A DNA stretch of 64,000 nt. Origin: Macrostomum hystrix (lineage: Eukaryota; Animalia; Platyhelminthes). A program made the translations under genes and the position numbers. Within the stretch, counting starts at the first letter, position 1. Every line of letters starts with the position of its first letter. The stretch is taken from the NCBI GenBank assembly GCA_950097015.1, contig CATNEN010000011.1, forward strand, positions 5,394,001 to 5,458,000, given 5' to 3'. Under the pieces are notes generated by a model. It saw only the letters and a program-made list of their open reading frames with translations. It had not been told where the DNA came from and ran no database searches. Positions 1 through 47,765 of the stretch are shown one piece after another.

Positions 1-582
1 TCACGGCATTAGCGTTGATGGCAAGATTTCAAATGATTGTGCCGCTCTTCGGGGCTTGATTTCCCAACGAGTTCCATTGCGCCGTTGAGTGTCCGAAATG
101 TTTACTATTCTCCAACGATGAGGGTTTCCAGCTTTTTTGTCAACAAAACTCTCAAACAGAAATGTGTAAGGCGCTTTTTTTAGTTAATATCAATCTTAAT
201 TAATAGCTCGTATTTTGTTGGTGCTCAGATCTTTTGTCTTGCAATCTGGTCATTTATTCTAGCGTAAAAAGTTTTATGTACTAGCAATACTTTTTTCATG
301 AAAAATAATTTTTTAAGATGTGATACTCATGGCTAGTGTATTGACAGTACAATGTTTATTTACAAATAAATTCAAAGTTGTTCTTTGATCATGTTCTGAA
401 ATATTATTTGTTACATAATTTCTTTTGTTCTGATTATTTATTTCCTGATATGTTTAAACTAGTAAATTACGGACTTATTAGGACTAATAGATTGCGGAAG
501 TGAATGACATTGTCGACTAGGCAAGCCAGGTCTCATTCACTTCTATTTGAACTCTTGCAGATCTGAAGTCCTGAATTTGAGC

Positions 583-3492
583 ATGGCCTCAGCGCAGGTG
601 TATTGCAGCTTCTGCGGTGACAACCCGGCCGCTGTCTATTGCGCCACTCCTGGCTGCAGCAGGAATGTGCTGTGCAATGGCTGCGACAAAATCTGGCACG
701 GTCATCCTAATCGGAAGGGGCATATTACAGAGCCTTATAATCATCAGCAGCAACAGGCAAAGGCTGACACTCCTCTTCCACCGCCGCGATCGCCAAATCG
801 TCCCTACCCACCGCCGCAGCGACCACCTCCCCCGCGGCCGTCATCGGCCGGCTGGCAGTGCCAGCACTGCACCTTCTTGAATGAGCCGCCTCCGACTGGT
901 TCGGCTAAGAAAATTTGCGGCATGTGCGGCAAAACTCATGGACTGCCCCCTGCGATTGGTACAGGGAACCATCCTGATTCAAACTCCGAATGTGTAAGCT
1001 CTGAGATTGATCAAAGACCGCCAGCTCATGAGCAAACTGTTGGTACAACTGGAAGACCTGAAGACTCTGCTACAAATGTAGATGAGCTTAAAAAACAGTA
1101 TCTGCAGCATCAACAGAGACAGGGGGAAGAGAAGCCCTTTTCATATGAAGAGCAGCAACGATTTCTAAACGAACTGCAGCATTTGAAAAAGAAAGACATT
1201 GCAGGTGGTGAAATTCAGCAGGTGAGACAGCAGACAGAGCAACAGGAGAGACAGCACAGAGAGCAACAGGAGAGACTGCAGAGAGAGCAACAGGAGAGAC
1301 TGCAGAGAGAGCAACAGGAGAGACTGCAGAGAGAGCAACAGGAAAGACTACAGAGAAAGCAACAGGAGAGACTGCAGAGAGAGCAACAGGAGAGACAGCA
1401 GAGAGAGCAACAGGTGAGACAGCAGAGAGAGCAACAGGAGAGACAGCAGAGAGAGCAACAGGAGAGACTGCAGAGAGAGCAACAGGAGAGACTGCAGAGA
1501 GAGCAACAGGAGAGACTGCAGAAAGAGAAACAGGAGAGACTGCAGAGAGAGCAACAGGAGAGACAGCAGAGAGAGCAACAGGAGAGACTGCAGAAAGAGA
1601 AACAGGAGAGACTGCAGAGAGAGCAGCAGGAGAGACTGCAGAAAGGGCAACAGGAGAGACTGCAGAAAGGGCAACAGGAGAGACTGCAGAAAGAGCAGCA
1701 GGAGAGACTGCAGAGAGAGCAGCAGGAGAGACTGCAGAAAGAGCAGCAGGAGAGACAGCATTCGCAAATTCACTCTCCTTCAGACAATAGATCCGGCAAG
1801 TACGCTATTCGACAATCTGGTGGATCACATCAGAGCATCTGTGGCAGCTCCAGCAGCTGGGTTTGTGTTCACTGCACGCTTGAGAATCCAGTACCAGTTG
1901 AGCAGGGCTCTACACGAGCAGTTTGCAGCGCCTGCAACCGTTCCTCTGAACTTAATAGTGCCACATCCAATGGTGCCATGGCAGCCCGCAGTGAGACAAT
2001 GAGCGACGCATTCGGTGCCGTAGGTGGTGGGGCTGCTGAGCCAAATTTTGAATTTTCAGACGAAGTTCAGAGGCTTGCAGCACATCTGCTAGTAGAAGAG
2101 TGGGTGGCAGAGCGACTTTTAGCTGTGAAATCCGCGCCAAAGTTTCAACAATTTTCCGAACAGGATCTGGCTGCCGCCATCGAGTCTTGTGGCGAGTTGG
2201 CATACGAAGATGAAGCATTGCTGAGTCAGCTCCAGTGCAAGTGCAGTCGCTGCGCACAGCTCTTACCGCGACACAAGCTGGTGTCAATGATTGCGTGCGA
2301 GTGCCAAATGTGTCCGGACTGCTTTAGGGGGTACCTGCACAAGTTGAGCGGTAGTCAAATTCAGTGTCCAGTGTGTCACTTAAAATGCGATGATGAGTAC
2401 AGTCGCGAGCACATGCGAATGATGCTGCTGGAATTGGTGGATGTTCTCGGTGCTGATGCGGTCCAGTTCGCAGTCTTGCATCTTGAAGAATCTCCAGATA
2501 GTAGTGACCCTCGCTCTAACAATGGCTGGGAATCAGTGAAAGGCAAAAAAGGTTCAAATAAGAAAACTGAAGCTCACGATGAATCTATTTCCAACGCAAA
2601 TAGAATTAATTTCTGTCCGCACCACGTTGACGCGGTTGAAAAAAGAGCAACGCGTATCCCTGATAATTTCTGTAAGAAATGCAAGCAAAACGTCTGCACG
2701 CAGTGCAGCGGCTTCTGGGCAGATCACCAGCAGATGGACTGTGACAGCTACAAAAGGAAATTAGCCAGCAAGCAGAGTAGCGTTGTTGCTGCTGCTGCTG
2801 CTAAGGATGCCGCTAGTTATAGTAAACCTGGCCCAATTAAACCTGCAAAGCTGCAAAGTCAGATGATGGAGTTGCTGCAATCTGAGCTGAGGTGTCCCAG
2901 TTGCAGTCGCTTCTTCGAGAGAGTCTCCAAATCTGGTTATTACAGATTCCGCTGCTCCTGCAAGCATGAATTTTGTCCGTTTTGTTTGTCTCCCTTCATC
3001 GGCTGTCACGATGGCTGCAGAATTCGTGGAGTTCATGTGCACCACCAGAGACAGTGCTTCTTCTCACTGAAGCAAGCGAAGCAGACCACATTGATAGGCT
3101 TGCTTAGTTCTAAGAAAGTAGCCATCAATTCTGACTGCCCGTCAACAAAGAAGCAATGTCAGATTCTTGATCTCAAGCAGGAGAAAATTCAGTTGGTCGT
3201 GTTGCCATGTAACGAGAAAGTAACGCACAACAAGCCAGGTGTATGCGACAGACACTACCGTGAGTACCTGATTCAGCTCATCAATGCGCACAGACTTGAC
3301 CTGGTAGATGTTGCCAAAGAGAATGAGCTGCTGGAGATGTTCGAGAGATTCAGTTTGAGTGTTCCAGTAGTTTCTATGTCAAGCCCTACAACTGCAAAAA
3401 AGCAGCAAAAGTTGGCTATCTTTCGAGAGCAGTTTAAGAAATTGGTGCCTCCACTCAGTACCAGGGTCAGCATGAAAGAGACCGCATTGTAG
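583..3492 (+). CDS. RNF31: HOIP/RNF31 (LUBEL)-like RBR protein: B-box, NZF, octad repeat, NZF, UBA-like, RING1, IBR, RING2, LDD; catalytic Cys replaced
   Basis: Single-exon ORF; first ATG at 583 (track start 547 is TTG). HOIP-type B-box CSFCGDNPAAVYC...LCNGCDKIWHGHPNRKGH; NZF WQCQHCTFLN and WVCVHCTLEN; RING1 CSRCAQLLPRHKLVSMIACECQMCPDCF; IBR CKKCKQNVCTQC..W..H...C; RING2 CPSC...CSCKHEFCPFC; LDD HHQRQCFFSLK...GVCDRHYREYLIQLINAHRLD, compared with human HOIP HHPRDCLFYLR...GLCQAHYKEYLVSLINAHSLD. No PUB domain is recognisable. Confidence 0.88.
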   Translation: MASAQVYCSFCGDNPAAVYCATPGCSRNVLCNGCDKIWHGHPNRKGHITEPYNHQQQQAKADTPLPPPRSPNRPYPPPQRPPPPRPSSAGWQCQHCTFLNEPPPTGSAKKICGMCGKTHGLPPAIGTGNHPDSNSECVSSEIDQRPPAHEQTVGTTGRPEDSATNVDELKKQYLQHQQRQGEEKPFSYEEQQRFLNELQHLKKKDIAGGEIQQVRQQTEQQERQHREQQERLQREQQERLQREQQERLQREQQERLQRKQQERLQREQQERQQREQQVRQQREQQERQQREQQERLQREQQERLQREQQERLQKEKQERLQREQQERQQREQQERLQKEKQERLQREQQERLQKGQQERLQKGQQERLQKEQQERLQREQQERLQKEQQERQHSQIHSPSDNRSGKYAIRQSGGSHQSICGSSSSWVCVHCTLENPVPVEQGSTRAVCSACNRSSELNSATSNGAMAARSETMSDAFGAVGGGAAEPNFEFSDEVQRLAAHLLVEEWVAERLLAVKSAPKFQQFSEQDLAAAIESCGELAYEDEALLSQLQCKCSRCAQLLPRHKLVSMIACECQMCPDCFRGYLHKLSGSQIQCPVCHLKCDDEYSREHMRMMLLELVDVLGADAVQFAVLHLEESPDSSDPRSNNGWESVKGKKGSNKKTEAHDESISNANRINFCPHHVDAVEKRATRIPDNFCKKCKQNVCTQCSGFWADHQQMDCDSYKRKLASKQSSVVAAAAAKDAASYSKPGPIKPAKLQSQMMELLQSELRCPSCSRFFERVSKSGYYRFRCSCKHEFCPFCLSPFIGCHDGCRIRGVHVHHQRQCFFSLKQAKQTTLIGLLSSKKVAINSDCPSTKKQCQILDLKQEKIQLVVLPCNEKVTHNKPGVCDRHYREYLIQLINAHRLDLVDVAKENELLEMFERFSLSVPVVSMSSPTTAKKQQKLAIFREQFKKLVPPLSTRVSMKETAL
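1237..1764 (+). repeat. Coding 24-bp tandem repeat (about 22 copies) encoding EQQERLQR
   Basis: Unit GAGCAACAGGAGAGACTGCAGAGA, in frame inside the 583..3492 ORF. Confidence 0.95.
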
Positions 3493-5043
3493 ACTTCGGC
3501 CCTGCGTATTTGTTTTAATAATTCTAGCTGTCTATTTTCAAGCAGTTATATTCACTTTGCTTTCGACATACTTGACATTCATGTTCAACATGCATTCGTG
3601 TTTGTATCCTAGCGCGATTGGTGTAGGTATGAAGCTTCGTCTTAACTGGTGTAAAAGGTCATATTGATGCTGCTGGACGAATACTGTGAGCGTCTTATTT
3701 CACGATAAGAAGAGAAGAGATGGTTCAATGGTGTAGAACTGTGCTAAAGGCTCACAGGACTCACAGAACTCACAGGGCTTACGTACCGAATTATTATAAT
3801 CAAGTAAAATGTTTTTAGTTGTATTGTCCTTTTGTCGAGCTATTCAGATCCAGTAGCTTAATCGCTTAAATACGCTCAAATCGACCAATGAAGGCAAATA
3901 ATAAATTCGTAACAGGGTCGATGTTACATCCCTTTAATTATAAGTCATGCTGTCTTGTCCTCTTAAATTTTTTTTAGATTTTCTTGTCCTAACAACATTG
4001 ATGATAGAAAATTATCATAGTTCTTTGCTTTAACTGTTTTACTTTCTTGAAGTCAAATTTATCGTTTTTGTGTTTCTGTTTGTTCGGACCTGATAACTTT
4101 TCGCGTATTATTGAAACAATTCATACTACTCTAAAAGGCTGTTGCCTTTTAGATCCAGCTTCATTTTTGCCGGCTAAATTTGATTGTTAAAAAGTGTTTT
4201 TTAAAATAAAAAATACCTTTCTGTTTAGTCTGTGTGATCCATTTTATTAAGATCTTTCCTATTTATGCACAGTCGAAAATGCAGTGATTTTTACTTTTGA
4301 TTTATTGAGCCAATCAGTTTCTGGCTGTTAATTTTTGTGCGAATTCAAATTCTACATATAGACCGTATTCTTATAATTAGCTACGCGTAATCACTCTTGG
4401 AATAACTTGCCATTTTCACATGTGATTGTCTGCTACTCCTTTAGTTGCGACATTATTTTTAAAGAGAAGTTATTCTCATAAAAATAAGGTCGCCCATGTT
4501 GCCGATTCATAATATATTCTAATAAAGGTCTAACAATCAAATTTCCTATAATTAATTAGATTCTAAAGTATCTGCAAAGCTTAATTCAGCGCTCGTAATT
4601 AACTTTCGTTTTAAAATCTAACCATTTTTGAAAACCTACATGCTTCCAGTGGAAAATAGACTTAATATCGCCAAATTACTCGTATATTCCAGTGTTCTGT
4701 CTTTGACTTTTTCGATTATACTCGTATGTTACTGCTGTTTTTTCATTTTTTTGGACGGTAAATCATAAAATTAATAGTCCAAAATAGTAGTATGTCTGGA
4801 GTGGAGATATGGGGATATGTGTCACAGTTTTTCCGATTTAGGGGGGGGGTGATGGTGATTTCAAAACGTGGAAATGAAATAAATTTTCTATTTGAGTTGC
4901 GCATAAGGCCCCCCCCTAGTCGAATTCCTAGTTACTCTACTACATCACACATTCGAATTGTTCTGTTACTCCGGTTAGGTGACAATAAGAATATTTTTAT
5001 TTATACTAGCAGCAGTGCTTTGGTCACCGGCACATTCTTTAGT

Positions 5044-5318
5044 GACACTAGACCAGCAGCCAGCGAGGAGGCGATTCCAGCCATTCCGCTGACGCGTGAG
5101 CACACTGGCGCTTACAGTTACCTTACGCAGGCACAAACTCACTCAGACGGTGAAAATCTGCCTTGAATTTCTCATCGTCAGGCAGTGTGCATCTTCATTG
5201 TGTCTTGGAGGTTGGCCCTAAATGGCGTAAATTGCACGACAAGCCCCCAAGCCTTCCCTCCGGGGCTGCGCCCCAAATTAATGTGGCCTCGCCGCGGAAG
5301 ACCGCTTTGCTACCCACC
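5044..5318 (-). mobile_element. tRNA-derived SINE family 1, copy A
   Basis: Shares GACACTAGACC.GCAGCCAGCGAGGAGGC, TTTCTCATCGTCAGGCAGTGT and ATGTGGCCTCGCC with six other copies in the window; the tRNA-like head is partly deleted. Confidence 0.75.
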
Positions 5319-5491
5319 GCCCGGTTAGGTATCAGCGATTTATATTCGATTCCCGATTCTATAACAATTGCATGATGCTTTCAAACTATGGATCCTCAGA
5401 TTTCTAGGAACTGATACAGGGACTGTAAGCAGAAATTCAGCGGTTGGGATTATTATTATTTTTCATTTACATTTCAGAGTATCAGCATCGC

Positions 5492-7576
5492 ATGGCCGAT
5501 TCCGAGTGGTGCCAGTTTTGCGGTGACAAGCCTGCTGTCAAGCAGTGCTCCGTGGAAGGCTGCAGTAGGAAGCGACTTTGCGAAGGATGCGACGAAATTT
5601 GGCACGGTCATCCGGCGCGAAAAGATCACCAGAGAATCTACATTCAGCGAGCAGCGGTTTCCCATTTGAGCGTGCTCAAAACTCGCCACGCAAACGAGGA
5701 GCCAGCCAATGAGCCTAAGAACTTCGGCCAGCCAATAAGATCGCAGAGTACAAACCAGCCGGTTGGAGAGCGTTATTCTAGCCGGCTAGTCAGAGAGCCG
5801 GGCAGACAGACAGACAGTCGTCATTCTCCCGAAGGTCCTTCTGTCAGAGCTCAAGAATCGGTCGAATCCGACTCTAGAAACTATACAAGATTCCAGAATA
5901 CAAAGTCTCATGACCCTGGACAGCTCACTGGCTTGTCGTGGACGTGCCCGCATTGCACTTTTATAAGCGGATTCAGCTGTAAAAGTGAAGCTTCACTTGA
6001 TGATCGCATAACGTGCAAAGTGTGCTCGAGAACCAGCAGCCTAGAGGAGGTTTGTAACAGCTTAAGGTCTGAAACTGGAAAGCTGCTGTGCCTTAATTGC
6101 ACATTAATGAACGACCTGAGTTCTACACAATGCGAGGGCTGTAACAAACCACTGTATATCAAATCAGGAGATAATGCCATTGGCGATTCACTTTCTGAAT
6201 TTAACAGTCGTGCTGGTGATTCTGCTGCTACTGCTGGCACTCCAATCGCTGACTGGAGTGATAGTGGAGACATTGCCGCTTCTGCAAGATCTAGTGCTGA
6301 AGTGCACCATAATGGCGCGGGCATTCATGGCCTTCCAACGCCAGCATCGCATGATGTAGGGGCCACCCCTGCTGAGCCAGTTAATGCGAGCCTCCAGTGT
6401 CAGATTTGTACTTTTAAAAATAGTCTAACTGCAAGCGCCTGTGAAATTTGCGCAAATTCGTTGACGGAAGCGAGTTCTGCTGATGGGCATAGAAACATGC
6501 CTGCTGTTGAATTAGATCAGGAAAGGAAAATAATTGATTCAAAGATTACTGAACTGATAGACCAGGGCTTCAGTTACGAATCTGCTTCTCGCCTTGCCGG
6601 TGAAGAAATTAAGGATATTACACAAGGTCGGAACTCTCAGACATATTTTAATTATTCTTCACAGTACGTAGGTGGTACACCTGCTGCTCAAAGTGTCCGA
6701 TTTTGTTGTTTTCGATGTAATTTGTCAGCCGAGGAAGCTGAACCGTTTCAGATAAAAATCTGTGGCTGCCGGCTCTGCGCTGACTGCTTTCGGAAGGTTG
6801 TGGAAAACCTGAGAAATAAAATATTTTCCCTCTTAGACGTTAAATGTTACTGCAGAATCTTTGTTCAGAGCCAGAGCCCACAGGAGCTAGAAGAGCATTA
6901 TTTAGACGTGCGACAGCAAATCGTGAGAAAGCTTGGCGACGGAAATACAGAGCTGATTCTCAACTGCTTCGATAGCCTTGTTAGGCACTCTGGTCAGCGT
7001 ACCAAAGTCCAATTCAACAATAAGTTCGCATGCTCGCGGTGTAAGAAGCCTGAAGATTTGAGCCGGAAAATCCAGCTGCCTCACTGCGCCTGCGCTGTGT
7101 GCCCTCATTGCTTTGATGAGTTTATCGTGAAGAAACTGCTCACTGGATGTAGGGATAAATACGATTTACATTGTCCTGGTTGCTTTAGGTGTTTGCTTCG
7201 TGGCGAAGTTAACGAGAGCTTGAATTTTTTGCAAGATCAGATTTTTTACAACCACAGCCTAAAATATACGGAACAAGAAAGTCGAACAGCAGTGAACAAT
7301 CTAGTGTCCGTTTCGTCGGAGTCTCGCACATGTTCAAGGTGTTTTCATTCATCTTGCGTCGCTCCAGGCACAAGAATATTTCAGTGCCTACATGTCTCCT
7401 GCTACGCCTTCACCTGCTGCAGATGCCGAAAGCAAGCTGAAAGAATTGACTTCTGCTCGCACTGTGACCGCAGCAGTCAACCATTGCTTTGCCCATCGGG
7501 GCACCCCTTAGAACGTTCTCTATCCGGCTACGGCGATTGGTGCAAAGTTTGCCTCCAATTTATTTACTTAAAATAA
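5492..7576 (+). CDS. HOIP-like paralog 2: B-box, 3x NZF, UBA-like, two RING1-type fingers, C-terminal IBR-like Cys-rich domain; no RING2/LDD
   Basis: ATG at 5492 (track start 5444 is TTG). B-box CQFCGDKPAVKQC...LCEGCDEIWHGHPARKDH; NZFs WTCPHCTF, LCLNCTLMN..CEGC, QCQICTFKN..CEIC; UBA-like LIDQGF; two C..C-x(n)-C.C..C..CF fingers. Confidence 0.82.
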   Translation: MADSEWCQFCGDKPAVKQCSVEGCSRKRLCEGCDEIWHGHPARKDHQRIYIQRAAVSHLSVLKTRHANEEPANEPKNFGQPIRSQSTNQPVGERYSSRLVREPGRQTDSRHSPEGPSVRAQESVESDSRNYTRFQNTKSHDPGQLTGLSWTCPHCTFISGFSCKSEASLDDRITCKVCSRTSSLEEVCNSLRSETGKLLCLNCTLMNDLSSTQCEGCNKPLYIKSGDNAIGDSLSEFNSRAGDSAATAGTPIADWSDSGDIAASARSSAEVHHNGAGIHGLPTPASHDVGATPAEPVNASLQCQICTFKNSLTASACEICANSLTEASSADGHRNMPAVELDQERKIIDSKITELIDQGFSYESASRLAGEEIKDITQGRNSQTYFNYSSQYVGGTPAAQSVRFCCFRCNLSAEEAEPFQIKICGCRLCADCFRKVVENLRNKIFSLLDVKCYCRIFVQSQSPQELEEHYLDVRQQIVRKLGDGNTELILNCFDSLVRHSGQRTKVQFNNKFACSRCKKPEDLSRKIQLPHCACAVCPHCFDEFIVKKLLTGCRDKYDLHCPGCFRCLLRGEVNESLNFLQDQIFYNHSLKYTEQESRTAVNNLVSVSSESRTCSRCFHSSCVAPGTRIFQCLHVSCYAFTCCRCRKQAERIDFCSHCDRSSQPLLCPSGHPLERSLSGYGDWCKVCLQFIYLK

Positions 7577-8984: not shown

Positions 8985-10592
8985 ATGGCGGCTCATTGTG
9001 GCACTGAGCTGTGCCCCATTTGCTTCCGTGACCCGGTCAGGCTGAAGTGCGTCGACAGCGAGTGCCGCTTCGGAGCCATGTGCAGCTCCTGCTTCCAGTC
9101 GCATCACAGAGACGCGAACCACAAAGTTGTGGAGCTGCAAGCGGCCTCCATAATTGACCGCTGTGATCCAGTTGTTGCTAAGAGATTTGCTCAAGTGAAA
9201 GATCTGAGCGAGTTCCAGGAGGTCTCAGAGTCCGACCTCATCAATGCGATTCGGTCATTTGAATTCAGCGATTTCGACAATGCCGAGTTGCTCAGACAGT
9301 TGGAATGTAAATGCGCAAAATGCAGTTGCGTGATGCCTCATCTCAAGCTGGTTACCATGACGACATGCGGCTGTGAGCTGTGCTCAGCCTGCTTTCGCAG
9401 CTTTCTGCAAGGTCTGCCGAGTCGGGCGGACTGTCCGGCATGCAGAACAGCCTGGAGCAGCGATGCGGTGAGTCGCGAGTTCCTCAGGATTCAAGTGTAC
9501 GAGTTGGAGGCTGTGATGGGCTCAGATGAGGCTGGCAGAATGTTGCAGATGCTGGACGACTGGAGGGAACCTGAGGGAGCTGAGGCTGTTTCGCCGCGTG
9601 AAAGCAGCGATCAATCTGCCACTGCCACTCCTTCAGCCGAGGAGTCGCAAATTTCTGATTATTGTAACCTTTGCGGTTCGAATTTAGCCCGGATGCAGTG
9701 TACAGTTGACAGTTGTGTGGCGAGACGACTTTGCAATGATTGCGACCAACTCCTTCACAATCATCCGGCGAGAAAGGACCATTCTCGTACTGCTATAAAT
9801 ATGCAAACTGATCAGCTTGGCGACAACTCAGTTAAGCCGAACTCGATTGCCTGGTCTTGCCTACATTGCACTTTTGAGAATGCATTAAAGTGCGATATAG
9901 ACTATACAAGACACTGGCGCATTGCTTGCCAGGTGTGCAACAGCGTCCATAGCCTGTCGGATATTATTGAACTCATTAAATCCTCCACTGGCAGGAAGTT
10001 TTGCGTGAAGTGCTGCAGCTTGAATGATCCGCTGTCAGCAGGCTGCCAGTTATGCATGTCGACTAGGCGTAACAATGCGGCTGCCTCAACAAATCAGAGC
10101 ATTGAGGGGCCCACAAACCAACGAGAACTTATAAATAATCCTGAAACAATAGGTAGTAGCGCTGGGTCTGGTGCCTATTCAGTTCAAGGTCAGTTGATGC
10201 CAGCAGGTAGTGGCATTGAATCTCTGCCGCCAAGCTTCCCTAGGGGAACTGTGCACGGCAGCAAAGTTTCAGGGTCATCCCAGCTTCGCTCGTGCTGCAA
10301 ATGCCATCAAACTTCAATGGTGGACGTCTGCGCGAGCGTGTTTCAGTGCTCTCATTCCGACTGCAAAGCCGTAACTTGCTGCTCGTGTTCGGGGGAGATT
10401 AAAACACCTGGCTTCTGTCAAAAGTGTCACAGGCCTGATAGCGGGCGAAGCAACCTAGAAGACTCGGTTTGCGGGCATGCTTTAATGCCATCGAGTTCGG
10501 ATGACTCCTACCTTTGGTGCGACACGTGCAAGCGAATCGCTTGCAAGAGGTGCAGGCGAGTTATTCGCTCAATGGGTCATCATCACTGCTGA
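8985..10592 (+). CDS. HOIP-like paralog 3, domain-shuffled: B-box-like, UBA-like/RING1, B-box, 2x NZF, IBR-like Cys-rich C-terminus
   Basis: ELLRQLECKCAKCSCVMPHLKLVTMTTCGCELCSACFRSFL aligns with gene 1 ALLSQLQCKCSRCAQLLPRHKLVSMIACECQMCPDCFRGYL. Internal B-box CNLCGSN...LCNDCDQLLHNHPARKDH; NZF WSCLHCTFEN. The C-terminus aligns with that of paralog 2. Confidence 0.82.
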   Translation: MAAHCGTELCPICFRDPVRLKCVDSECRFGAMCSSCFQSHHRDANHKVVELQAASIIDRCDPVVAKRFAQVKDLSEFQEVSESDLINAIRSFEFSDFDNAELLRQLECKCAKCSCVMPHLKLVTMTTCGCELCSACFRSFLQGLPSRADCPACRTAWSSDAVSREFLRIQVYELEAVMGSDEAGRMLQMLDDWREPEGAEAVSPRESSDQSATATPSAEESQISDYCNLCGSNLARMQCTVDSCVARRLCNDCDQLLHNHPARKDHSRTAINMQTDQLGDNSVKPNSIAWSCLHCTFENALKCDIDYTRHWRIACQVCNSVHSLSDIIELIKSSTGRKFCVKCCSLNDPLSAGCQLCMSTRRNNAAASTNQSIEGPTNQRELINNPETIGSSAGSGAYSVQGQLMPAGSGIESLPPSFPRGTVHGSKVSGSSQLRSCCKCHQTSMVDVCASVFQCSHSDCKAVTCCSCSGEIKTPGFCQKCHRPDSGRSNLEDSVCGHALMPSSSDDSYLWCDTCKRIACKRCRRVIRSMGHHHC

Positions 10593-25360: not shown

Positions 25361-26169
25361 TGAGTTTCTGTGGAGATTCTGAAGATATTTTGAGAAGATT
25401 CTGGAAAGATTCTCAGGTGATTCTGAAGAGATTCATGATATTAGAAGCAGAGAGTAAATTTGAGCATCTCAGACCCAACCCCAGACTCATGTATCTCCCC
25501 TCACTCAGCCAGTCAGCAGTCAGACCCGTATTTATCCCGCGAGATTCAGCAATCTGACCTAATCTGCTAGCATCACAGCTGCAGCAGCAGTTCAATTTAT
25601 TTTCAATCAAAATTATCCACCCCATTAAGGTCTATCTGCCTCCTGAGAAAAAAATTTGCTTCAAATTTCTCACAGCGCGTGGATTCCTGCGTTCTGGGCA
25701 GACGGCCCCTGCTCTGGTAAATCGCGTTCCCAAATTGTGTCTGATGCAGCACAGACTTTGGGCGGGTAGCAGAAAAAATTACTGACTTCCGGTTTCCGCT
25801 TGCAGAGATGAGAAATCTGTGCCAGCCAGCCGAATACTCGACCCAGCAACCAGCCACCCTCGCTTTTTTCCTATCTCAGCCTCAGAGATAACACCTGCTA
25901 CCCCACTCCAGGTTGAATAAGCAAGTCATGCCTTCTCTCATTCACTCCTGCAATGTCTCCTGTTCCCATGCCAGCTCATGTGTGTGTTCCTTTTTCCATA
26001 GTAATTTCAATTTTATCAGTGCCCTTATTTTTGAGATACTCATTTTTAAGGGAGGGGGAATAAATGTACACTAGGCTAATTATCATCTTCTCACAGCCTG
26101 CGAACCTAACAGCATTCCTCCAGACCCTGTTCCCTACCTGTTATGCTCTGTTATGCTACCTGTTATTCT

Positions 26170-26800
26170 CCTATTCCCTCTTTCTTCCCCACTCTTCCCC
26201 TCTCCACCCTCTCTCCCCCTCTCCACCCCCTTCACCCTCTTTCCCTCTCCACCCTCTCTTGCCCTCTCTTCCCCTCTCTTCCCCTCTATTCCCCTCTCCA
26301 CCCCCTCCACTCTCTCTTCCCCTCTCCACCCTCTCTTCCCCTCTATTCCCCTCTCCACCCTCTCTTGCCCTCTCTTGCCCTCTCTTCCCCTCTATTCCCC
26401 TCTCTTCCCCTCTATTCCCCTCTACACCCTCTCTTGCCCTCTCTTGCCCTCTCTTCCCCTCTATTCCCCTCTCCACCCTCTCTTGCCCTCTCTTGCCCTC
26501 TCTTCCCCTCTATTCCCCTCTCTTCCCCTCTCCACCCTCTCTTCCCCTCTCCACCCTCTCTTCCCCTCTCCACCCTCTCTTCCCCTCTCCACCCTCTCTT
26601 CCCCTCTCCACTCCACCCTTTCTTCCCCTCTCCACCCTCTTTTCCCCTCTCCACCCTCTCTCCCCCTCTCCACCCTCTCTCGCCCTCTTCCCCTCTCCAC
26701 CCTCTCCACCCTCTCTTCCCCTCTCAACCCTCTCCACCCTCTCTTCCCCTCTTCACCCCTCCACCCTCTCTTCCCCTCTCTTCCCCTCCCCACCCACTCT
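26170..26800. repeat. Polypyrimidine (C/T) low-complexity repeat
   Basis: Motifs such as CCCCTCTCCACCCTCTCTT. Confidence 0.9.
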
Positions 26801-27689
26801 TCTCCTTTTTCCATCTTCCCCTCTGTCCCGCTCTCCCCAGCTACTTTCCTATGTTTTCCCCTTTTAAAACTTCTCTCCCCATTTGTTTTTTCAAAGCAGC
26901 GAAAAGTTCCTTATTTATAATTGCTTAACAAGAAGATACTCGTTGCTCAATATGTCCGGGTAAACTTCGCATTTAATCTTCCGTCGGGTACTTATCGGCT
27001 TTTGAAAGGCGGCTAGCGATGCTGCAGCCCTCGCCGCGGAGAATACTCGGGGTGTTAATATCGTTGCTAAAGAAATTCGCGCTGATAGGAGGGGTGGAAT
27101 GGATAATTTGTGTGGGATCTTAGCGAGGCCAAGGGCGTGTCGGGGTCCCGAATTTTGCAGAGATACGCGCCTAGTTGCATCGGCTGCACTCTATAAATAG
27201 CTGATAGTTTTATAGAATAAATGAATAACGTGTGTAGCTGTCGCATGCGTGTGTCTTTGCGTGTGTCTTATTCTTTAGCTCTATCTTACTAGATATCTCT
27301 CCAATCAGTCATTTGTGGGCCCAAGCAGCAGTAGCAGCAGCAGCAGCAGATGAGCAGCAGATGGTACTCAATGGAAGCCCCGATTATTAAGAATTATTTT
27401 CGCCCTAAGGCAGTTCAGTTCGTGCCAAGTCGGAACTGTCATTTTGTGTATTAAAACTTGTCGATACTAGGCATAAAATATTTGTAGAAGACTCTGGGAA
27501 GATTCCTGAGTCCTTCTCAAAAAAGATGCTTTAGAGATTCAAGGTGGATTCGCAAGAGATTCTAGGGAGATTTTGGAGAGATTCTGGGAAAACTCTTGTG
27601 AGATTCTCAGAAGAATCTAAGGCTAATCCGGAGAGATTCTGGGAAGTTTTTGCGGAAATTCTGGGGATTTTCTCGAGCGATTCCAGGAA

Positions 27690-38452: not shown

Positions 38453-39384
38453 ATGCAGCTCATTGTGCTTTGCTGCCTGCTGACCGCGGCTGGAGCCATC
38501 AGCGGGCCAGATAACTACACCAACATTGTTGACCGCATCGTGGACACAATCTTCGAGAACTACAACAAGCACCAGAGGCCGGTGTCTCATCACGTTCCTC
38601 AGCAGCACTACGACAGTTCCCAGAGGCCGATTGAGCCACCAACCGAAGTCGAAGTGAACATGAAAATTCTCAGCATCACCAAAGTTGACGTCATCAACAT
38701 GGAGTTCAGCGTTGACATGTACCTGAGACAGTTCTGGCGGGACCATCGACTGGAATGGGACACCAGAAGACAGTTCAGCTTCTACAACGACTCCATCGCC
38801 ATCCCGGCCAAGAAGGAGCATCTGTGGCTCCCTGATTTGTTCTTTCGCAATGGCAAGGAGGGCTATTTGCACAAGATGACGCAGCCGAATTATCTCATCC
38901 GGGTGGAGCCAGACGGAAGTATTCTGTACTCGCAGAAGATCACAATGAAGTTTTCCTGTCAGATGCAGCTGCAGACATTCCCCATGGACACGCAGACATG
39001 CTTCATCAACATTGGCAGCTACGGTTACACCACAAAGAATCTGCTTTTCAAATGGAAGAGAGACAAATTAAAAAGCGCGGTAGAGATGGACAATATGCAG
39101 ATCTCGGAGTTCAACACGCCAAAGTATGTCGAAGTGTCCGACTGTACAAAGGGCAGTGCAACCAGCACCGGCAGCTACGCTTGCCTCATCGCCATCTTCA
39201 AGCTGGAGAGACAGCTTAGCAGCTATTTGGCTGGCACCTACATTCCTGCCATTCTCATTGTCACCGTGAGCTGGCTCAACTTCTGGGTCAGCATTGAAGC
39301 TGTGCCAGCCAGGGTGACTCTGGGCCTGCTCACCCTGCTGGGCATACTCACCCAGGCCTCCACTGTCATGGCCAGCCTGCCAAG
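38453..39384 (+). CDS. Cys-loop ligand-gated chloride channel (GluCl-like), first coding exon B: signal peptide, ECD, TM1, TM2
   Basis: Paralogous to exon A throughout (GPDNYTNIVDRIVD, MYLRQFWRD, CQMQLQTFPMDTQTC, PARVTLGLLTLL). Donor CCAAG|GTCAGG after 39384 (phase 2), at the same codon as exon A. Confidence 0.92.
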
Positions 39385-39419
39385 GTCAGGGGGTGAAATG
39401 GACTGGCTAACAGTAGAGG

Positions 39420-41062
39420 GCGGATGGATGAGAGGAGAGAGCGGATGGATGAGAGGAGAGAGCGGATGGATGAGAGGAGAGAGTGAATGGGATGAGAGTA
39501 GAAAGCGGATGGATGAGAGGAGAGAGCGGATGGATGAGAGGAGAGAGCGGATGGATGAGAGGAGAGAGCGGATGGATGAGAGGAGAGAGCGGATGGATGA
39601 GAGTAGAGAGCGGATGGATGAGAGGAGAGAGCGGATGGATGAGAGGAGAGAGCGGATGGATGAGAGGAGAGAGCGGATGGATGAGAGGAGAGAGCGGATG
39701 GATGAGAGGAGAGAGCGGATGGATGAGAGTAGAGAGCGGATGGATGAGAGGAGAGAGCGGATGGATGAGAGGAGAGAGCGGATGGATGAGAGGAGAGAGC
39801 GGATGAATGAGAGGAGAGAGCGGATGGATGAGAGGAGAGAGCGGATGGATGAGAGGAGAGAGCGGATGGATGAGAGTAGAGAGCGGATGGATGAGAGGAG
39901 AGAGCGGATGGATGAGAGGAGAGAGCGGATGGATGAGAGGAGAGAGCGGATGGATGAGAGGAGAGAGCGGATGAATGAGAGGAGAGAGCGGATGGATGAG
40001 AGGAGAGAGCGGATGGATGAGAGGAGAGAGCGGATGGATGAGAGTAGAGAGCGGATGGATGAGAGGAGAGAGCGGATGGATGAGAGGAGAGAGCGGATGG
40101 ATGAGAGGAGAGAGCGGATGGATGCGAGGAGAGAGCGGATGGATGAGAGTAGAGAGCGGATGGATGAGAGGAGAGAGCGGATGGATGAGAGGAGAGAGCG
40201 GATGAATGAGAGGAGAGAGCGGATGGATGAGAGGAGAGAGCGGATGGATGAGAGGAGAGAGCGGATGGATGAGAGTAGAGAGCGGATGGATGAGAGGAGA
40301 GAGCGGATGGATGAGAGGAGAGAGCGGATGGATGAGAGGAGAGAGCGGATGGATGAGAGGAGAGAGCGGATGAATGAGAGGAGAGAGCGGATGGATGAGA
40401 GGAGAGAGCGGATGGATGAGAGGAGAGAGCGGATGGATGAGAGTAGAGAGCGGATGGATGAGAGGAGAGAGCGGATGGATGAGAGGAGAGAGCGGATGGA
40501 TGAGAGGAGAGAGCGGATGGATGAGAGGAGAGAGCGGATGGATGAGAGTAGAGAGCGGATGGATGAGAGGAGAGAGCGGATGGATGAGAGGAGAGAGCGG
40601 ATGGATGAGAGTAGAGAGCGGATGGATGAGAGGAGAGAGCGGATGGATGAGAGTAGAGAGCGGATGGATGAGAGGAGAGAGCGGATGGATGAGAGGAGAG
40701 AGCGGATGGATGAGAGTAGAGAGCGGATGGATGAGAGTAGAGAGCGGATGGATGAGAGTAGAGAGCGGATGGATGAGAGGAGAGAGCGGATGGATGAGAG
40801 GAGAGAGCGGATGGATGAGAGTAGAGAGCGGATGGATGAGAGGAGAGAGCGGATGGATGAGAGGAGAGAGCGGATGGATGAGAGTAGAGAGCGGATGGAT
40901 GAGAGGAGAGAGCGGATGGATGAGAGGAGAGAGCGGATGGATGAGAGGAGAGAGCGGATGGATGAGAGTAGAGAGCGGATGGATGAGAGGAGAGAGCGGA
41001 TGGATGAGAGTAGAGAGCGGATGGATGAGAGTAGAGAGCGGATGGATGAGAGGAGAGAGCGA
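39420..41062. repeat. 21-bp intronic minisatellite
   Basis: Unit GAGAGCGGATGGATGAGAGGA. Confidence 0.96.
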
Positions 41063-41454
41063 ATGATTCATAGAAGGTCTAAGAGGGTAAGGAGGAGTTT
41101 ATAAAAGTTTTTCGCTGATTCCTGAATATAAGTCGCACGCTTAAAACCTGGGCTTGTCGGTAGAACAGTTGTTTCCTATGTTTTGTAACTGTGGCCACTT
41201 TAATTAATTTTAAAAGCACATCAGAATCGGCGATACGCACCCAGCAACAATCAGTGCTTCTCTCTTGTCAAAGATTGAAAGAAAAAACGAGGCGCTAGTC
41301 TTGTCATGTAAGGAAACGAAAATACTTCAGATCGTGATGATAGTTGGAAGAATTATTGTCCAACAGATACACAAATAGGCTGCGGTTTTTATATCTATAA
41401 ATATTTTTGTTTGGAAAATTTGGTTACACTTCTATAGATAGATAGGATGATAAC

Positions 41455-47100: not shown

Positions 47101-47765
47101 AAAAGCGAATTTCGAAGTCCTCTGTTTTGACACAGTCAATTTTTTCAGGGCCGGATTCTAGCGAATCAAAAGTTTCTTGATAGTGGATCGAGAGAAAGGA
47201 CTGCTCAGAACGATTTCTTAAAAGGAACAGTTTTGCTGACCCACACTTACCTCTGCTCAGGCACTCTGCCCCAAACTGTACTCAGTACTTGCTCAACGCC
47301 ATAAGCCACCCAGCATATACTGCAGCAGCTAAACAGTCAGCAGTCTGAGCAAAGTTAAGAAGAGGTCCAAACAGGTCCACTTCCTTCCGGCAGGTCAATT
47401 CTGACTTTCTAGCTCAAGCCACACGGTCATATTGTATGAGGAATATAGTTTGCAGAAATCCTAGGGCTAACTAGAGTACAGAGATGCTGTGTGCTCAAAT
47501 GCCTCAGCAAGCTGAATATGGGATGGATGAGATGAAGGTTTGATTATTTACCTGCTTAAGTTGGGATTGCGTTATTACTGTAGGTAGTTTCAGCACAGGT
47601 TTGGAATTGTGAATCCGGATCAATATATATGGCTTGTTTTGACTTGACAACAGGTACTAAAAGAGTACAATTATGTAGTACTTTAGTACTGCTTAGTACT
47701 GCTAATTTTTAGTACTGTTTTGCTTTCAAAAACATGGTTGTGAAGCCTATGTACTATCCATGCCT

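What the first reader, a model, noticed from the sequence alone, without database searches (positions are those of the whole stretch)
2890..3080. HOIP-like RBR ligase with its catalytic dyad and LDD acceptor residues replaced: candidate pseudo-ligase
Seen: RING2 reads CPSCSRFFERVSKSG-Y-Y-R-FRC (TAT at 2938-2940) where human HOIP has CPKCKFSYALARGG-C885-M-H887-FHC. The LDD reads HHQRQCFFSL-K-Q versus HHPRDCLFYL-R935-D936. The Zn ligands are all retained. Known (HOIP numbering from memory): C885 forms the ubiquitin thioester, H887 activates the acceptor, and R935/D936 position the acceptor ubiquitin for Met1 linkage. Inference: the fold is conserved but inactive, so the protein could be a scaffold, allosteric partner or dominant-negative decoy of linear ubiquitination.
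Basis: partly seen in the sequence, partly recalled or inferred. Interest (0 to 1): 0.75.

Follow-up and report, generated by a model that had tools for sequence, protein, structure and literature searches.

The report
Flatworm HOIP copy without catalytic residues
A flatworm gene copied from the only enzyme known to build head-to-tail ubiquitin chains keeps the enzyme's shape but has lost the residues that do the chemistry, and relatives show the loss is old and the protein has been kept, so it most likely has a non-enzymatic job.

Summary
An intact, intronless gene (CDS 583-3492, +, 969 aa) encodes a HOIP/RNF31 homologue. Three independent alignments put Tyr786 (TAT 2938-2940) on catalytic Cys885, Arg788 on His887, and Lys830/Gln831 on Arg935/Asp936.

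- **Fold:** all zinc ligands of RING1, RING2 and the LDD are kept. The AlphaFold model superposes on human HOIP RING2-LDD (Z 18-19).
- **How unusual:** among 146 RING2-LDD proteins from public data, about 95% keep each of the four residues. Only this protein and its Macrostomum lignano homologues lose all four.
- **Not a sequencing error:** contigs from a second study also read TAT. One run carries an ATT (Ile) variant. None reads TGT.
- **Not a dead gene:** the ORF is intact, dN/dS against M. lignano is about 0.2 or less, and transcript-like contigs cover it.
- **Relaxed active site:** positions 885-887 vary among copies, while their flanks and the new Lys-Gln motif are fixed.
- **Neighbour:** in M. 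lignano these genes flank a short paralogue that still has Cys, His, Arg and Asp.

Best reading: a conserved RBR pseudo-ligase, probably a scaffold or regulator. Inactivity and role are untested. The scan had already noted this HOIP gene array on adjoining DNA. I found no paper describing it.

The parts
583..3492 (+). Complete intronless coding sequence of the HOIP-like protein (969 aa from ATG 583; the open frame starts at TTG 547; stop at 3490-3492)
   Evidence: ORF list; homology to human RNF31 and to M. lignano P0001-P0004
601..723 (+). N-terminal B-box-like zinc finger
   Evidence: Weak Pfam hit PF22586, E 0.003, below the cut-off. It is 60% identical to the N-terminus of gene 2. Coordinates
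850..933 (+). NZF-type zinc finger 1 (W-x-C-x2-C-T-F motif)
   Evidence: Motif read from the translation. tblastn with a mammalian RNF31 covers 604-942. No Pfam hit of its own
1219..1760 (+). 22.6 tandem copies of a 24-nt unit encoding a Glu/Gln/Arg-rich octapeptide (EQQERLQR-like); probably a long helical spacer
   Evidence: Tandem Repeats Finder, 93% matches; translation. The helical nature is inferred
1855..1944 (+). NZF-type zinc finger 2
   Evidence: Weak Pfam hit PF16988 (Vps36 NZF-N), E 0.02; coordinates
2053..2235 (+). Helical UBA-like segment preceding RING1
   Evidence: Aligns with the segment before RING1 in mammalian RNF31
2236..2379 (+). RING1, with all eight Cys ligands retained
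   Evidence: Invariant Cys columns in alignment A1. phmmer domain 1 matches RNF31 RING1.
2611..2751 (+). IBR-like domain, divergent: the second Cys of the first zinc site is His here and Arg or Gly in M. lignano
   Evidence: Pfam IBR is only sub-threshold
2893..2985 (+). RING2 (Rcat) with its six zinc-ligand Cys but no catalytic Cys
2938..2940 (+). TAT = Tyr786, in the column of HOIP catalytic Cys885
   Evidence: Contigs of X1 and X7 agree, X5 has ATT, none has TGT
2944..2946 (+). AGA = Arg788, in the column of HOIP general-base His887
3001..3357 (+). LDD (linear-chain determining domain): zinc finger 1, helical base, zinc finger 2 and C-terminal helices
   Evidence: Pfam PF18091, E 1.6e-13. 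AF2 model with pLDDT 83.5. Z 18-19 to HOIP structures
3070..3075 (+). AAG CAA = Lys830-Gln831, in the columns of HOIP Arg935-Asp936 (acceptor-ubiquitin contacts)
   Evidence: Lys-Gln is fixed in the window copy and in P0001-P0003
3900..3905 (+). AATAAA, the probable polyadenylation signal. Contigs of runs X5 and X7 end at 3924
   Evidence: inferred

Best explanation
Gene 1 of this window encodes a HOIP/RNF31 paralogue that can no longer act as a RING-between-RING ligase. It keeps the RING1, IBR, RING2 and LDD zinc scaffold and the N-terminal zinc fingers, but it has no cysteine to accept ubiquitin from the E2 (Tyr at 885). It also has no histidine to activate the acceptor amine (Arg at 887), and the Arg-Asp pair that orients the acceptor ubiquitin for Met1 linkage is replaced by Lys-Gln. 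The loss happened in an ancestor of Macrostomum flatworms after a duplication of HOIP. It was followed by a burst of change and then by purifying selection, so the protein is a maintained pseudo-ligase and not a decaying gene. Shown here: the homology, the fold, the residue replacements, their rarity, their age, the constraint, and contigs consistent with transcription. Inferred: the protein works by binding and not by catalysis. It could bind ubiquitin or chains through the NZF fingers, possibly an E2 through RING1, and other partners through the remodelled but conserved LDD surface. The most likely role is as a scaffold, targeting subunit or competitor for the neighbouring short paralogues that still carry the catalytic residues.
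For: - **Homology and fold:** phmmer to RNF31 structures gives E 5e-24. Pfam LDD scores 51 bits against a cut-off of 23. The AF2 model has pLDDT 83.5 and pTM 0.80. Foldseek TM is 0.76 to 4ljp/4ljo, and VIA-align gives Z 18-19 over HOIP 857-1072.
- **Residue losses:** three alignment methods agree.
- **Rarity:** of 146 RING2-LDD proteins, Cys885 is Cys in 140, His887 is His in 139, Arg935 is Arg in 140 and Asp936 is Asp in 138. The only proteins that lose all four are this one and M. lignano P0001, P0002, P0003 and P0136.
- **Age and constraint:** the Cys-less sequences group together (96% SH-aLRT) on a long stem, with short branches among the window copy and P0001-P0003; P0136 is itself a very long branch and its placement is unsure. 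For RING2-LDD, window against M. lignano gives dN 0.34-0.36 with dS saturated above 1.6, so omega is about 0.2 or lower. The 969-codon ORF is intact.
- **Pattern of change:** 12 of the 19 near-invariant canonical positions that were lost carry one and the same new residue in all four close copies (for example Gly to Ser, Arg to Lys, Asp to Gln, Gln to Leu). The former Cys-Met-His positions vary (Y/V/A/I, Y/P/S/D, R/V/T/H) between fixed flanks.
- **Transcription:** contigs of X5 and X7 cover the gene at depth 34-57 up to 3924, about 20 nt after an AATAAA, and thin out beyond it. Contigs of three runs begin at 5477, just after a polypyrimidine-AG, with about 23 non-genomic letters, as a spliced leader would give.
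- **Candidate partner:** in M. lignano contig NIVC01000691, a 533-aa paralogue (P0022) with Cys885, His887, Arg935 and Asp936 lies between Cys-less P0001 and P0003.
Against: No activity assay exists, so inactivity is inferred from residues alone. Only contigs were available, not raw reads, and their RNA origin is inferred and not recorded. M. lignano copies and the X5 variant carry an extra Cys 2-3 residues after the second zinc ligand, at the HOIP 876 or 877 column depending on the alignment. This lies on the strand next to the old active site, so relocated chemistry cannot be excluded for those copies. The window copy has Phe there. Omega between the two M. lignano paralogues is about 0.5, so constraint is not strong everywhere. 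Whether this genome has a Cys-bearing copy could not be checked by me: none lies in this window, and earlier scan notes on the upstream window are unverified. The M. lignano short copy P0022 lacks the Cys911/Cys916 pair of LDD zinc finger 1, so its own competence is also only predicted.
Confidence: 0.68

Rival explanations
1. It is still a ligase with a relocated or unconventional nucleophile. One candidate is the extra Cys in the C-x2-C-x2-C arrangement seen in M. lignano copies and in the X5 variant. Another is a Ser of the conserved Ser-Lys-Ser-Gly loop. Either would take the ubiquitin from the E2.
For: The extra Cys is present in P0001-P0003 and, one residue earlier, in P0136, and in the X5 contig (TTC to TGC at 2911-2913). 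In canonical HOIPs that column is Cys in only 4 of 146 rows. It lies on the beta-strand that pairs with the 886-889 strand; this follows from the pocket residues Tyr878, Leu880 and Phe888 named in PMC7125101. RING1 and all zinc sites are preserved, as a working RBR would need.
Against: The window copy has Phe at that position and Arg at both 887 and 889, so it has no Cys/His pair at all. Every other Cys of its RING2-LDD aligns to a zinc ligand, except one in a variable LDD loop that is Trp in P0003. The acceptor-orienting Arg-Asp pair and a near-invariant Gln (Leu here) in the segment that follows LDD zinc-ligand Cys969 are also replaced. A Cys885-to-Ser HOIP did not form a detectable oxyester (PMC3463842).
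Confidence: 0.06
2. It is a young pseudogene or a functionless relic, still open by chance in a rapidly duplicating tandem array.
For: The gene sits in a tandem array of domain-shuffled copies (scan notes). The catalytic loop is hypervariable. Omega between two M. lignano paralogues is about 0.5.
Against: The reading frame is open over 969 codons. Four to five Cys-less genes are intact in a species so distant that synonymous sites are saturated, while dN is only 0.34-0.36. Many replaced positions are fixed to the same new residue in all copies. All zinc ligands are kept. Transcript-like contigs cover the gene.
Confidence: 0.08
3. It is an artefact: a sequencing or assembly error at the TAT codon, or a misalignment that hides the true catalytic Cys.
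For: A single-base change separates TAT from TGT. One run (X5) differs from the window exactly in this stretch.
Against: Contigs from a second, independent study (X7) read the window sequence. The X5 variant reads ATT, not TGT. His887, Arg935 and Asp936 are replaced as well. M. lignano homologues assembled independently have Tyr, Val or Ala at this column. The alignment is anchored on both sides by zinc-ligand pairs and by the Gly-x3-Phe-x-Cys frame, and three methods agree.
Confidence: 0.01
4. It is a pseudo-ligase, but specifically a dominant-negative decoy. It would sequester the E2~ubiquitin or ubiquitinated substrates and so damp Met1-chain formation by the Cys-bearing paralogues, and would not be a positive scaffold or targeting subunit.
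For: RING1 ligands are intact. There are two NZF-like fingers. The gene lies in the same cluster as a Cys-bearing short copy in M. lignano. There is a precedent: inactive TRIM pseudoligases repress active relatives (PMC13591260).
Against: Nothing in the sequence distinguishes inhibition from recruitment. The long N-terminal modules that the short copy lacks (B-box-like finger, helical repeat) fit a targeting role at least as well. The remodelled LDD surface is conserved, which suggests a new binding function and not mere loss.
Confidence: 0.15

Closest known systems
HOIP / RNF31 (vertebrates) and LUBEL (arthropods), the Met1-specific RBR ligase of LUBAC
   Same: Same RBR-LDD architecture and fold. 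The LDD is exclusive to HOIP (PMC3463842) and is detected here at 51 bits. The model superposes on HOIP 857-1072 with Z 18-19. RING1, RING2 and LDD zinc ligands are retained, and there are NZF-like fingers upstream.
   Different: Tyr replaces Cys885, Arg replaces His887, and Lys-Gln replaces Arg935-Asp936. Nineteen of 52 near-invariant RING2-LDD positions are changed. No PUB domain was detected. A B-box-like finger and a 22-copy Glu/Gln/Arg-rich repeat have been added. The IBR is divergent and the gene has no introns.
Macrostomum lignano hypothetical proteins BOX15_Mlig011956g1, Mlig012523g1, Mlig033604g4, Mlig004413g2 and Mlig012393g2 (P0001-P0004, P0136)
   Same: These are the nearest relatives, 50-58% identical, with the same architecture. 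They also lack Cys885 (Tyr, Val or Ala), and four of the five lack His887. P0001-P0003 share the Lys-Gln motif.
   Different: Synonymous sites are saturated, so they come from a different species. P0001-P0003 keep His at the 889 column and have an extra Cys after the second zinc ligand. They lack the Cys911 equivalent, which the window copy keeps. They are unannotated 'hypothetical proteins', and I found no paper on them.
RING E3 pseudoligases of the TRIM family (Dudley-Fraser et al. 2025, cited in PMC13591260)
   Same: The concept is the same: a ligase fold retained, catalysis lost, and proposed roles as scaffold or regulator of active paralogues. This protein also has a B-box-like finger followed by a long helical region.
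   Different: Those are RING-type E3s that lose E2 activation through the dimer interface or the linchpin residue. Here an RBR (RING/HECT-hybrid) enzyme has lost the thioester nucleophile itself. My searches found no described RBR counterpart.
The IBR ('benign catalytic', BRcat) domain of RBR ligases
   Same: It has a RING2-like zinc fold without the active-site Cys. This comparison rests on my own knowledge of RBR nomenclature.
   Different: That is a separate domain inside active enzymes. Here the true RING2 (Rcat), still followed by the LDD, has lost the Cys.

Membership tests
HOIP/RNF31 family (by descent) | C-terminal LDD (Pfam PF18091), which is exclusive to HOIP | tested here: met
   51 bits against a cut-off of 23, E 1.6e-13. 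Structural match Z 18-19 covering HOIP 857-1072.
HOIP/RNF31 family (by descent) | RING1-IBR-RING2 zinc scaffold | tested here: met
   RING1 has 8 of 8 ligands. RING2 and LDD ligands are retained. The IBR has one Cys changed to His. The Pfam IBR hit is only sub-threshold.
HOIP/RNF31 as an enzyme (Met1-specific RBR ligase) | Catalytic Cys in RING2 (human Cys885) that forms the ubiquitin thioester | tested here: not met
   Tyr786 (TAT 2938-2940) occupies the column, which is Cys in 140 of 146 homologues.
HOIP/RNF31 as an enzyme (Met1-specific RBR ligase) | General-base His (human His887) | tested here: not met
   Arg788 occupies the column, which is His in 139 of 146.
HOIP/RNF31 as an enzyme (Met1-specific RBR ligase) | Acceptor-ubiquitin contacts Arg935 and Asp936 in the LDD | tested here: not met
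   Lys830 and Gln831 occupy the columns, which are Arg in 140 and Asp in 138 of 146. Their role is given in PMC7125101.
HOIP/RNF31 as an enzyme (Met1-specific RBR ligase) | Formation of Met1-linked ubiquitin chains | not testable with these tools
   This needs an in vitro assay.
LUBAC-type HOIP (vertebrate architecture) | N-terminal PUB domain and the UBA that binds HOIL-1L/SHARPIN | tested here: inconclusive
   No Pfam PUB or UBA hit at E up to 1. A helical segment aligns with the region just before RING1 of RNF31, but partner binding cannot be judged.
Pseudo-enzyme / pseudo-ligase (concept) | Fold of the active family retained while the catalytic residues are missing | tested here: met
Pseudo-enzyme / pseudo-ligase (concept) | Maintained by selection and expressed, so not a pseudogene | tested here: met
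   The ORF is intact. dN is 0.34-0.36 against saturated dS. Replacement residues are fixed. Transcript-like contigs cover the gene, but only contigs were available and their RNA status is inferred.
Pseudo-enzyme / pseudo-ligase (concept) | Demonstrated lack of catalytic activity | not testable with these tools
   This needs biochemistry.

The most novel reading that the evidence does not exclude
Macrostomum flatworms may have built a linear-ubiquitin machine entirely from HOIP paralogues. The long Cys-less copies (B-box-like finger, NZFs, helical spacer, dead RBR-LDD with a new conserved Lys-Gln surface) would be obligate non-catalytic targeting or activating subunits of the neighbouring short Cys-bearing copies. 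They would play the part that HOIL-1L and SHARPIN play for vertebrate HOIP.
Probability: 0.18. Interest if true: 0.7.

Novelty: new variant of a known kind. Interest (0 to 1): 0.5.

Why it matters
HOIP is the only enzyme known to make Met1-linked ubiquitin chains, and its RING2-LDD core is among the most strictly conserved parts of the ubiquitin system; here about 95% of 146 homologues keep each key residue. A clade that keeps this core folded and under selection after discarding the nucleophile, the base and the acceptor contacts would be a natural separation-of-function variant. It would show what the HOIP scaffold can do without catalysis. It would also extend the pseudo-ligase idea, so far described for RING-type TRIMs, to the RBR class. 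M. lignano is amenable to RNAi and transgenesis, so the question can be tested there. The claim is still only a sequence-based prediction in a non-model lineage, and it concerns one member of a gene array that this scan has already flagged.

Tried and rejected
- **Word-based protein search** with residues 560-981 found only four M. lignano proteins and two mammalian RNF31. It was too insensitive for a census, so the exhaustive representative search was used.
- **Cys-bearing RING2-LDD elsewhere in the window:** tblastn with P0022, P0001, P0136 and P0005 found none. Genes 2 and 3 match only N-terminal, NZF and RING1-like parts.
- **Literature:** 'HOIP' with 'pseudo-ligase' gave 0 papers. 'Macrostomum' with 'RNF31' gave 0. 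'RBR' with 'pseudoligase' gave only TRIM-related papers. 'RING-between-RING', 'catalytically inactive' and 'pseudoenzyme' together gave 0. The M. lignano ubiquitin ligase and duplication search gave nothing relevant.
- **Raw-read check of TAT:** not possible, because all runs on offer were Logan contigs. No listed run is recorded as RNA, so the RNA nature of X1, X5 and X7 is my inference.
- **Careful maximum-likelihood tree:** it did not finish in the time allowed, so the quick tree was used and the long branches carry a warning.
- **dN/dS, window against M. lignano:** synonymous sites are saturated, so only an upper bound is given.
- **Distance between the extra-Cys position and the old active site:** I could not measure it, because model coordinates are not returned. 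The argument from strand pairing is an inference. The column equivalence (HOIP 876 or 877) differs between phmmer and the profile alignment.
- **DNA outside the window:** I could not read the upstream copies of the array.
Full report
**What is there.** The window carries an uninterrupted ORF at 547-3492 on the + strand. The first ATG is at 583, which gives a 969-aa protein; I number from that Met.
- RING2 begins with TGT at 2893.
- TAT at 2938-2940 encodes Tyr786.
- AGA at 2944-2946 encodes Arg788.
- AAG CAA at 3070-3075 encode Lys830-Gln831.

**Is it HOIP?** Yes.
- Pfam finds the LDD (PF18091) at 51 bits against a curated cut-off of 23. The authors who defined this domain describe it as exclusive to HOIP (PMC3463842).
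- phmmer against all PDB sequences returns only human RNF31 chains as strong hits. For 5edv the E-value is 5e-24, with separate matches to RING1, the IBR and RING2-LDD.
- I built an AlphaFold2 model of residues 750-969 from a 106-sequence alignment. It has mean pLDDT 83.5 and pTM 0.80.
- Foldseek puts HOIP RING2-LDD structures first, with TM 0.76 to 4ljp and 4ljo. VIA-align gives Z 18-19 with about 200 aligned residues spanning HOIP 857-1072. The next unrelated fold scores Z 4.

**Are the catalytic residues really replaced?** Three independent alignments agree: phmmer to the human chain, a local profile-HMM alignment and MAFFT.
- Tyr786 sits in the Cys885 column, Arg788 in the His887 column, Arg790 in the His889 column, and Lys830/Gln831 in the Arg935/Asp936 columns.
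- The alignment is anchored on both sides by the zinc-ligand pairs (871/874 and 890/893) and by the Gly884 and Phe888 columns.
Cys885 carries the thioester, and Arg935/Asp936 contact Glu16/Thr14 of the acceptor ubiquitin and are required for activity (PMC7125101). His887 deprotonates Met1 of the acceptor (PMC8589444).
The only spacing change is C-x-C in place of C-x2-C at 890/893.
- Every other Cys of RING2-LDD aligns with a zinc ligand, except one in a variable LDD loop that is Trp in one M. lignano homologue. So this copy has no alternative Cys at the active site.

**Is it an error?** No. Only Logan contigs could be laid, not raw reads.
- Run X1 may be the source of the assembly. Run X7, from another study, matches the window across 2938-2940.
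- Run X5, from the same study as X7, carries a variant. Five of its eight substitutions and both indels in 926 nt fall within 2901-2949. They turn Gly-Tyr-Tyr-Arg-Phe into Gly-Ile-Ser-Thr-Phe, change Ser773 to Arg, and change Phe777 to Cys.
- No contig reads TGT at the catalytic column.
- Whether the two versions are alleles or near-identical paralogues cannot be told from contigs.

**How unusual is it?** An exhaustive HMMER search of 1.84 billion representative proteins found 173 relatives. Of these, 146 had an alignable RING2-LDD. Conservation of the key columns is as follows:

| HOIP column | Canonical residue | Rows that keep it (of 146) |
|---|---|---|
| 885 | Cys | 140 |
| 887 | His | 139 |
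| 935 | Arg | 140 |
| 936 | Asp | 138 |

- The only proteins that lose all four are this one and four Macrostomum lignano proteins: P0001, P0002, P0003 and the more divergent P0136 (names).
- These M. lignano proteins are the nearest relatives of the window protein, at 50-58% identity. They have Tyr, Val or Ala at column 885.
- The loss therefore predates the split of the two species. That split is deep: synonymous sites are saturated.
- Other exceptions are isolated. A spider fragment has Ser at 885 but keeps Arg-Asp.

**Is it a dead gene?** The evidence says no.
- The ORF is intact here and in at least four M. lignano genes.
- For RING2-LDD, dN between window and M. lignano is 0.34-0.36 while dS exceeds 1.6. 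This gives omega of about 0.2 at most. Two M. lignano paralogues compared with each other give about 0.5.
- In the quick ML tree the Cys-less sequences group together (96% SH-aLRT) on a very long stem, and the branches among the window copy and P0001-P0003 are short. P0136 is itself a very long branch, so its place is unsure. This pattern means a burst of change and then conservation. The tree carries a long-branch warning.
- Of 52 RING2-LDD columns that are at least 90% conserved in canonical HOIPs, the window protein keeps 33. Twelve of the 19 lost ones carry one and the same new residue in all four close Cys-less proteins, including Arg935 to Lys and Asp936 to Gln.
- The former Cys-Met-His positions differ from copy to copy, between invariant flanks. 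That is what relaxation of catalytic constraint on a still-constrained fold should look like.
- A near-invariant Gln in the segment that follows LDD zinc-ligand Cys969 is Leu in all four copies.

**Expression.**
- In X5 and X7 the contigs cover the gene at depth 34-57 up to 3924, about 20 nt after an AATAAA at 3900-3905. Coverage then falls to 0-10 until the next gene.
- Contigs of X1, X5 and X7 all start matching at 5477, immediately after a polypyrimidine tract and AG. Each has about 23 unmatched letters in front. That is what a spliced leader or an upstream exon would give.
- A similar acceptor (ttgcag) precedes gene 1 at 555-560.
- I therefore take these runs to be RNA and both genes to be transcribed. 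This is an inference from contigs, and no listed run is recorded as RNA.

**Context.**
- The window holds two more HOIP-derived genes, at 5492-7576 and 8985-10592. They share the B-box-like finger, NZF-like fingers and RING1-like modules but have no RING2-LDD.
- Earlier notes of this scan describe at least seven further copies just upstream and another Cys-less copy 3 kb before the window. I could not read that DNA and did not verify them.
- In M. lignano contig NIVC01000691 the order is Cys-less P0001, then a 533-aa gene (P0022), then Cys-less P0003.
- P0022 has the canonical Gly-Gly-Cys-Met-His and Leu-Arg-Asp motifs. It lacks the Cys911/Cys916 pair of LDD zinc finger 1, so its competence is predicted and not certain.

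**How it most likely works.**
- Shown: a HOIP fold without a nucleophile, a base or the acceptor contacts. The loss is old, and the protein is conserved and probably expressed.
- Inferred: the protein cannot run the RING/HECT-hybrid reaction, so it acts by binding.
- Candidate binding modules are two NZF-like fingers (one with the Thr-Phe motif), an intact RING1, a 22-copy Glu/Gln/Arg-rich helical spacer, and an LDD surface remodelled to a conserved Lys-Gln-x-Lys-Gln-Thr-Thr motif.
- Because Cys-bearing short paralogues lie next to such genes in the sister species, a role as their scaffold, targeting subunit or competitor is the most economical idea. The data do not choose among these three.
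- The main rival with novelty is relocated chemistry through the extra Cys seen in M. lignano and in the X5 variant. For this window's copy (Phe777, Arg788, Arg790) it is very unlikely.

**Comparison and novelty.**
- By descent this is a HOIP family member. As an enzyme it fails three defining tests.
- The closest concept is the RING pseudoligases recently described among TRIM proteins (PMC13591260).
- I found no description of an RBR, or specifically HOIP, pseudo-ligase, nor any paper on these Macrostomum genes.
- I rate it a new variant of a known kind and moderately interesting. The prediction is solid and testable. It is still untested, lineage-restricted, and part of an array the scan has already reported.

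Noticed in passing
window 5492-7576 (+) and 8985-10592 (+): Two more intronless HOIP-derived genes. They have the B-box-like finger, NZF-like fingers and one or two RING1-like modules, but no RING2-LDD. Both end in a similar Cys/His-rich tail (C-x-C-H ... F-Q-C ... C-C-x-C) with no Pfam match. Gene 3 has a 601-aa relative in MetaClust (P0097).
   Followed up: partly
window 5474-5477: Contigs from three runs all begin matching at 5477, right after a polypyrimidine tract and AG, with about 23 non-genomic letters in front. This is probably a spliced-leader (trans-splice) acceptor 15 nt before the ATG of gene 2. A similar ttgcag precedes gene 1 at 555-560.
   Followed up: partly
window 4982-5383: A high-copy repeat lies between genes 1 and 2. 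Summed contig depth is 1,400-3,500 against about 40 for the flanks, with dozens of contigs, many internal joints and loose ends at 5038, 5156 and 5299. It is likely a dispersed mobile or satellite-like element.
   Followed up: no
window 2901-2949: In run X5, five of eight substitutions and both indels over 926 nt are packed into 49 nt around the former active-site loop. They give Arg773, Cys777 and Ile-Ser-Thr in place of Tyr-Tyr-Arg. This could be a gene-conversion tract from a paralogue or a hypervariable site.
   Followed up: partly
window 1219-1760: There are 22.6 near-perfect 24-nt repeats (93% matches) encoding an EQQERLQR-like octapeptide. This composition is typical of a single long charged helix. 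The scan notes say the upstream Cys-less copy has 28 such repeats.
   Followed up: no
L001:19444-21045 (M. lignano NIVC01000691): The 533-aa short HOIP paralogue P0022 keeps Cys885, His887, Arg935 and Asp936 but lacks the Cys911/Cys916 zinc-finger-1 pair that human HOIP needs for linear chains. Its linkage specificity may differ.
   Followed up: partly
P0114 / P0157 (spiders Caerostris darwini and Trichonephila inaurata): A spider RNF31-like cluster has Ser at the catalytic Cys column and Leu at the His887 column, while keeping Arg-Asp. This may be an independent second case of a non-Cys HOIP, or an annotation fragment.
   Followed up: no
window 26064-26928 and 47734-50377 (+): At each of these two places, three long overlapping same-strand ORFs are listed (255-267 aa and 812-846 aa; 47734, 47760 and 47939 are in different frames). 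At 38453-41104, long ORFs are open on both strands. This suggests low-complexity or repetitive coding sequence. I did not examine it.
   Followed up: no
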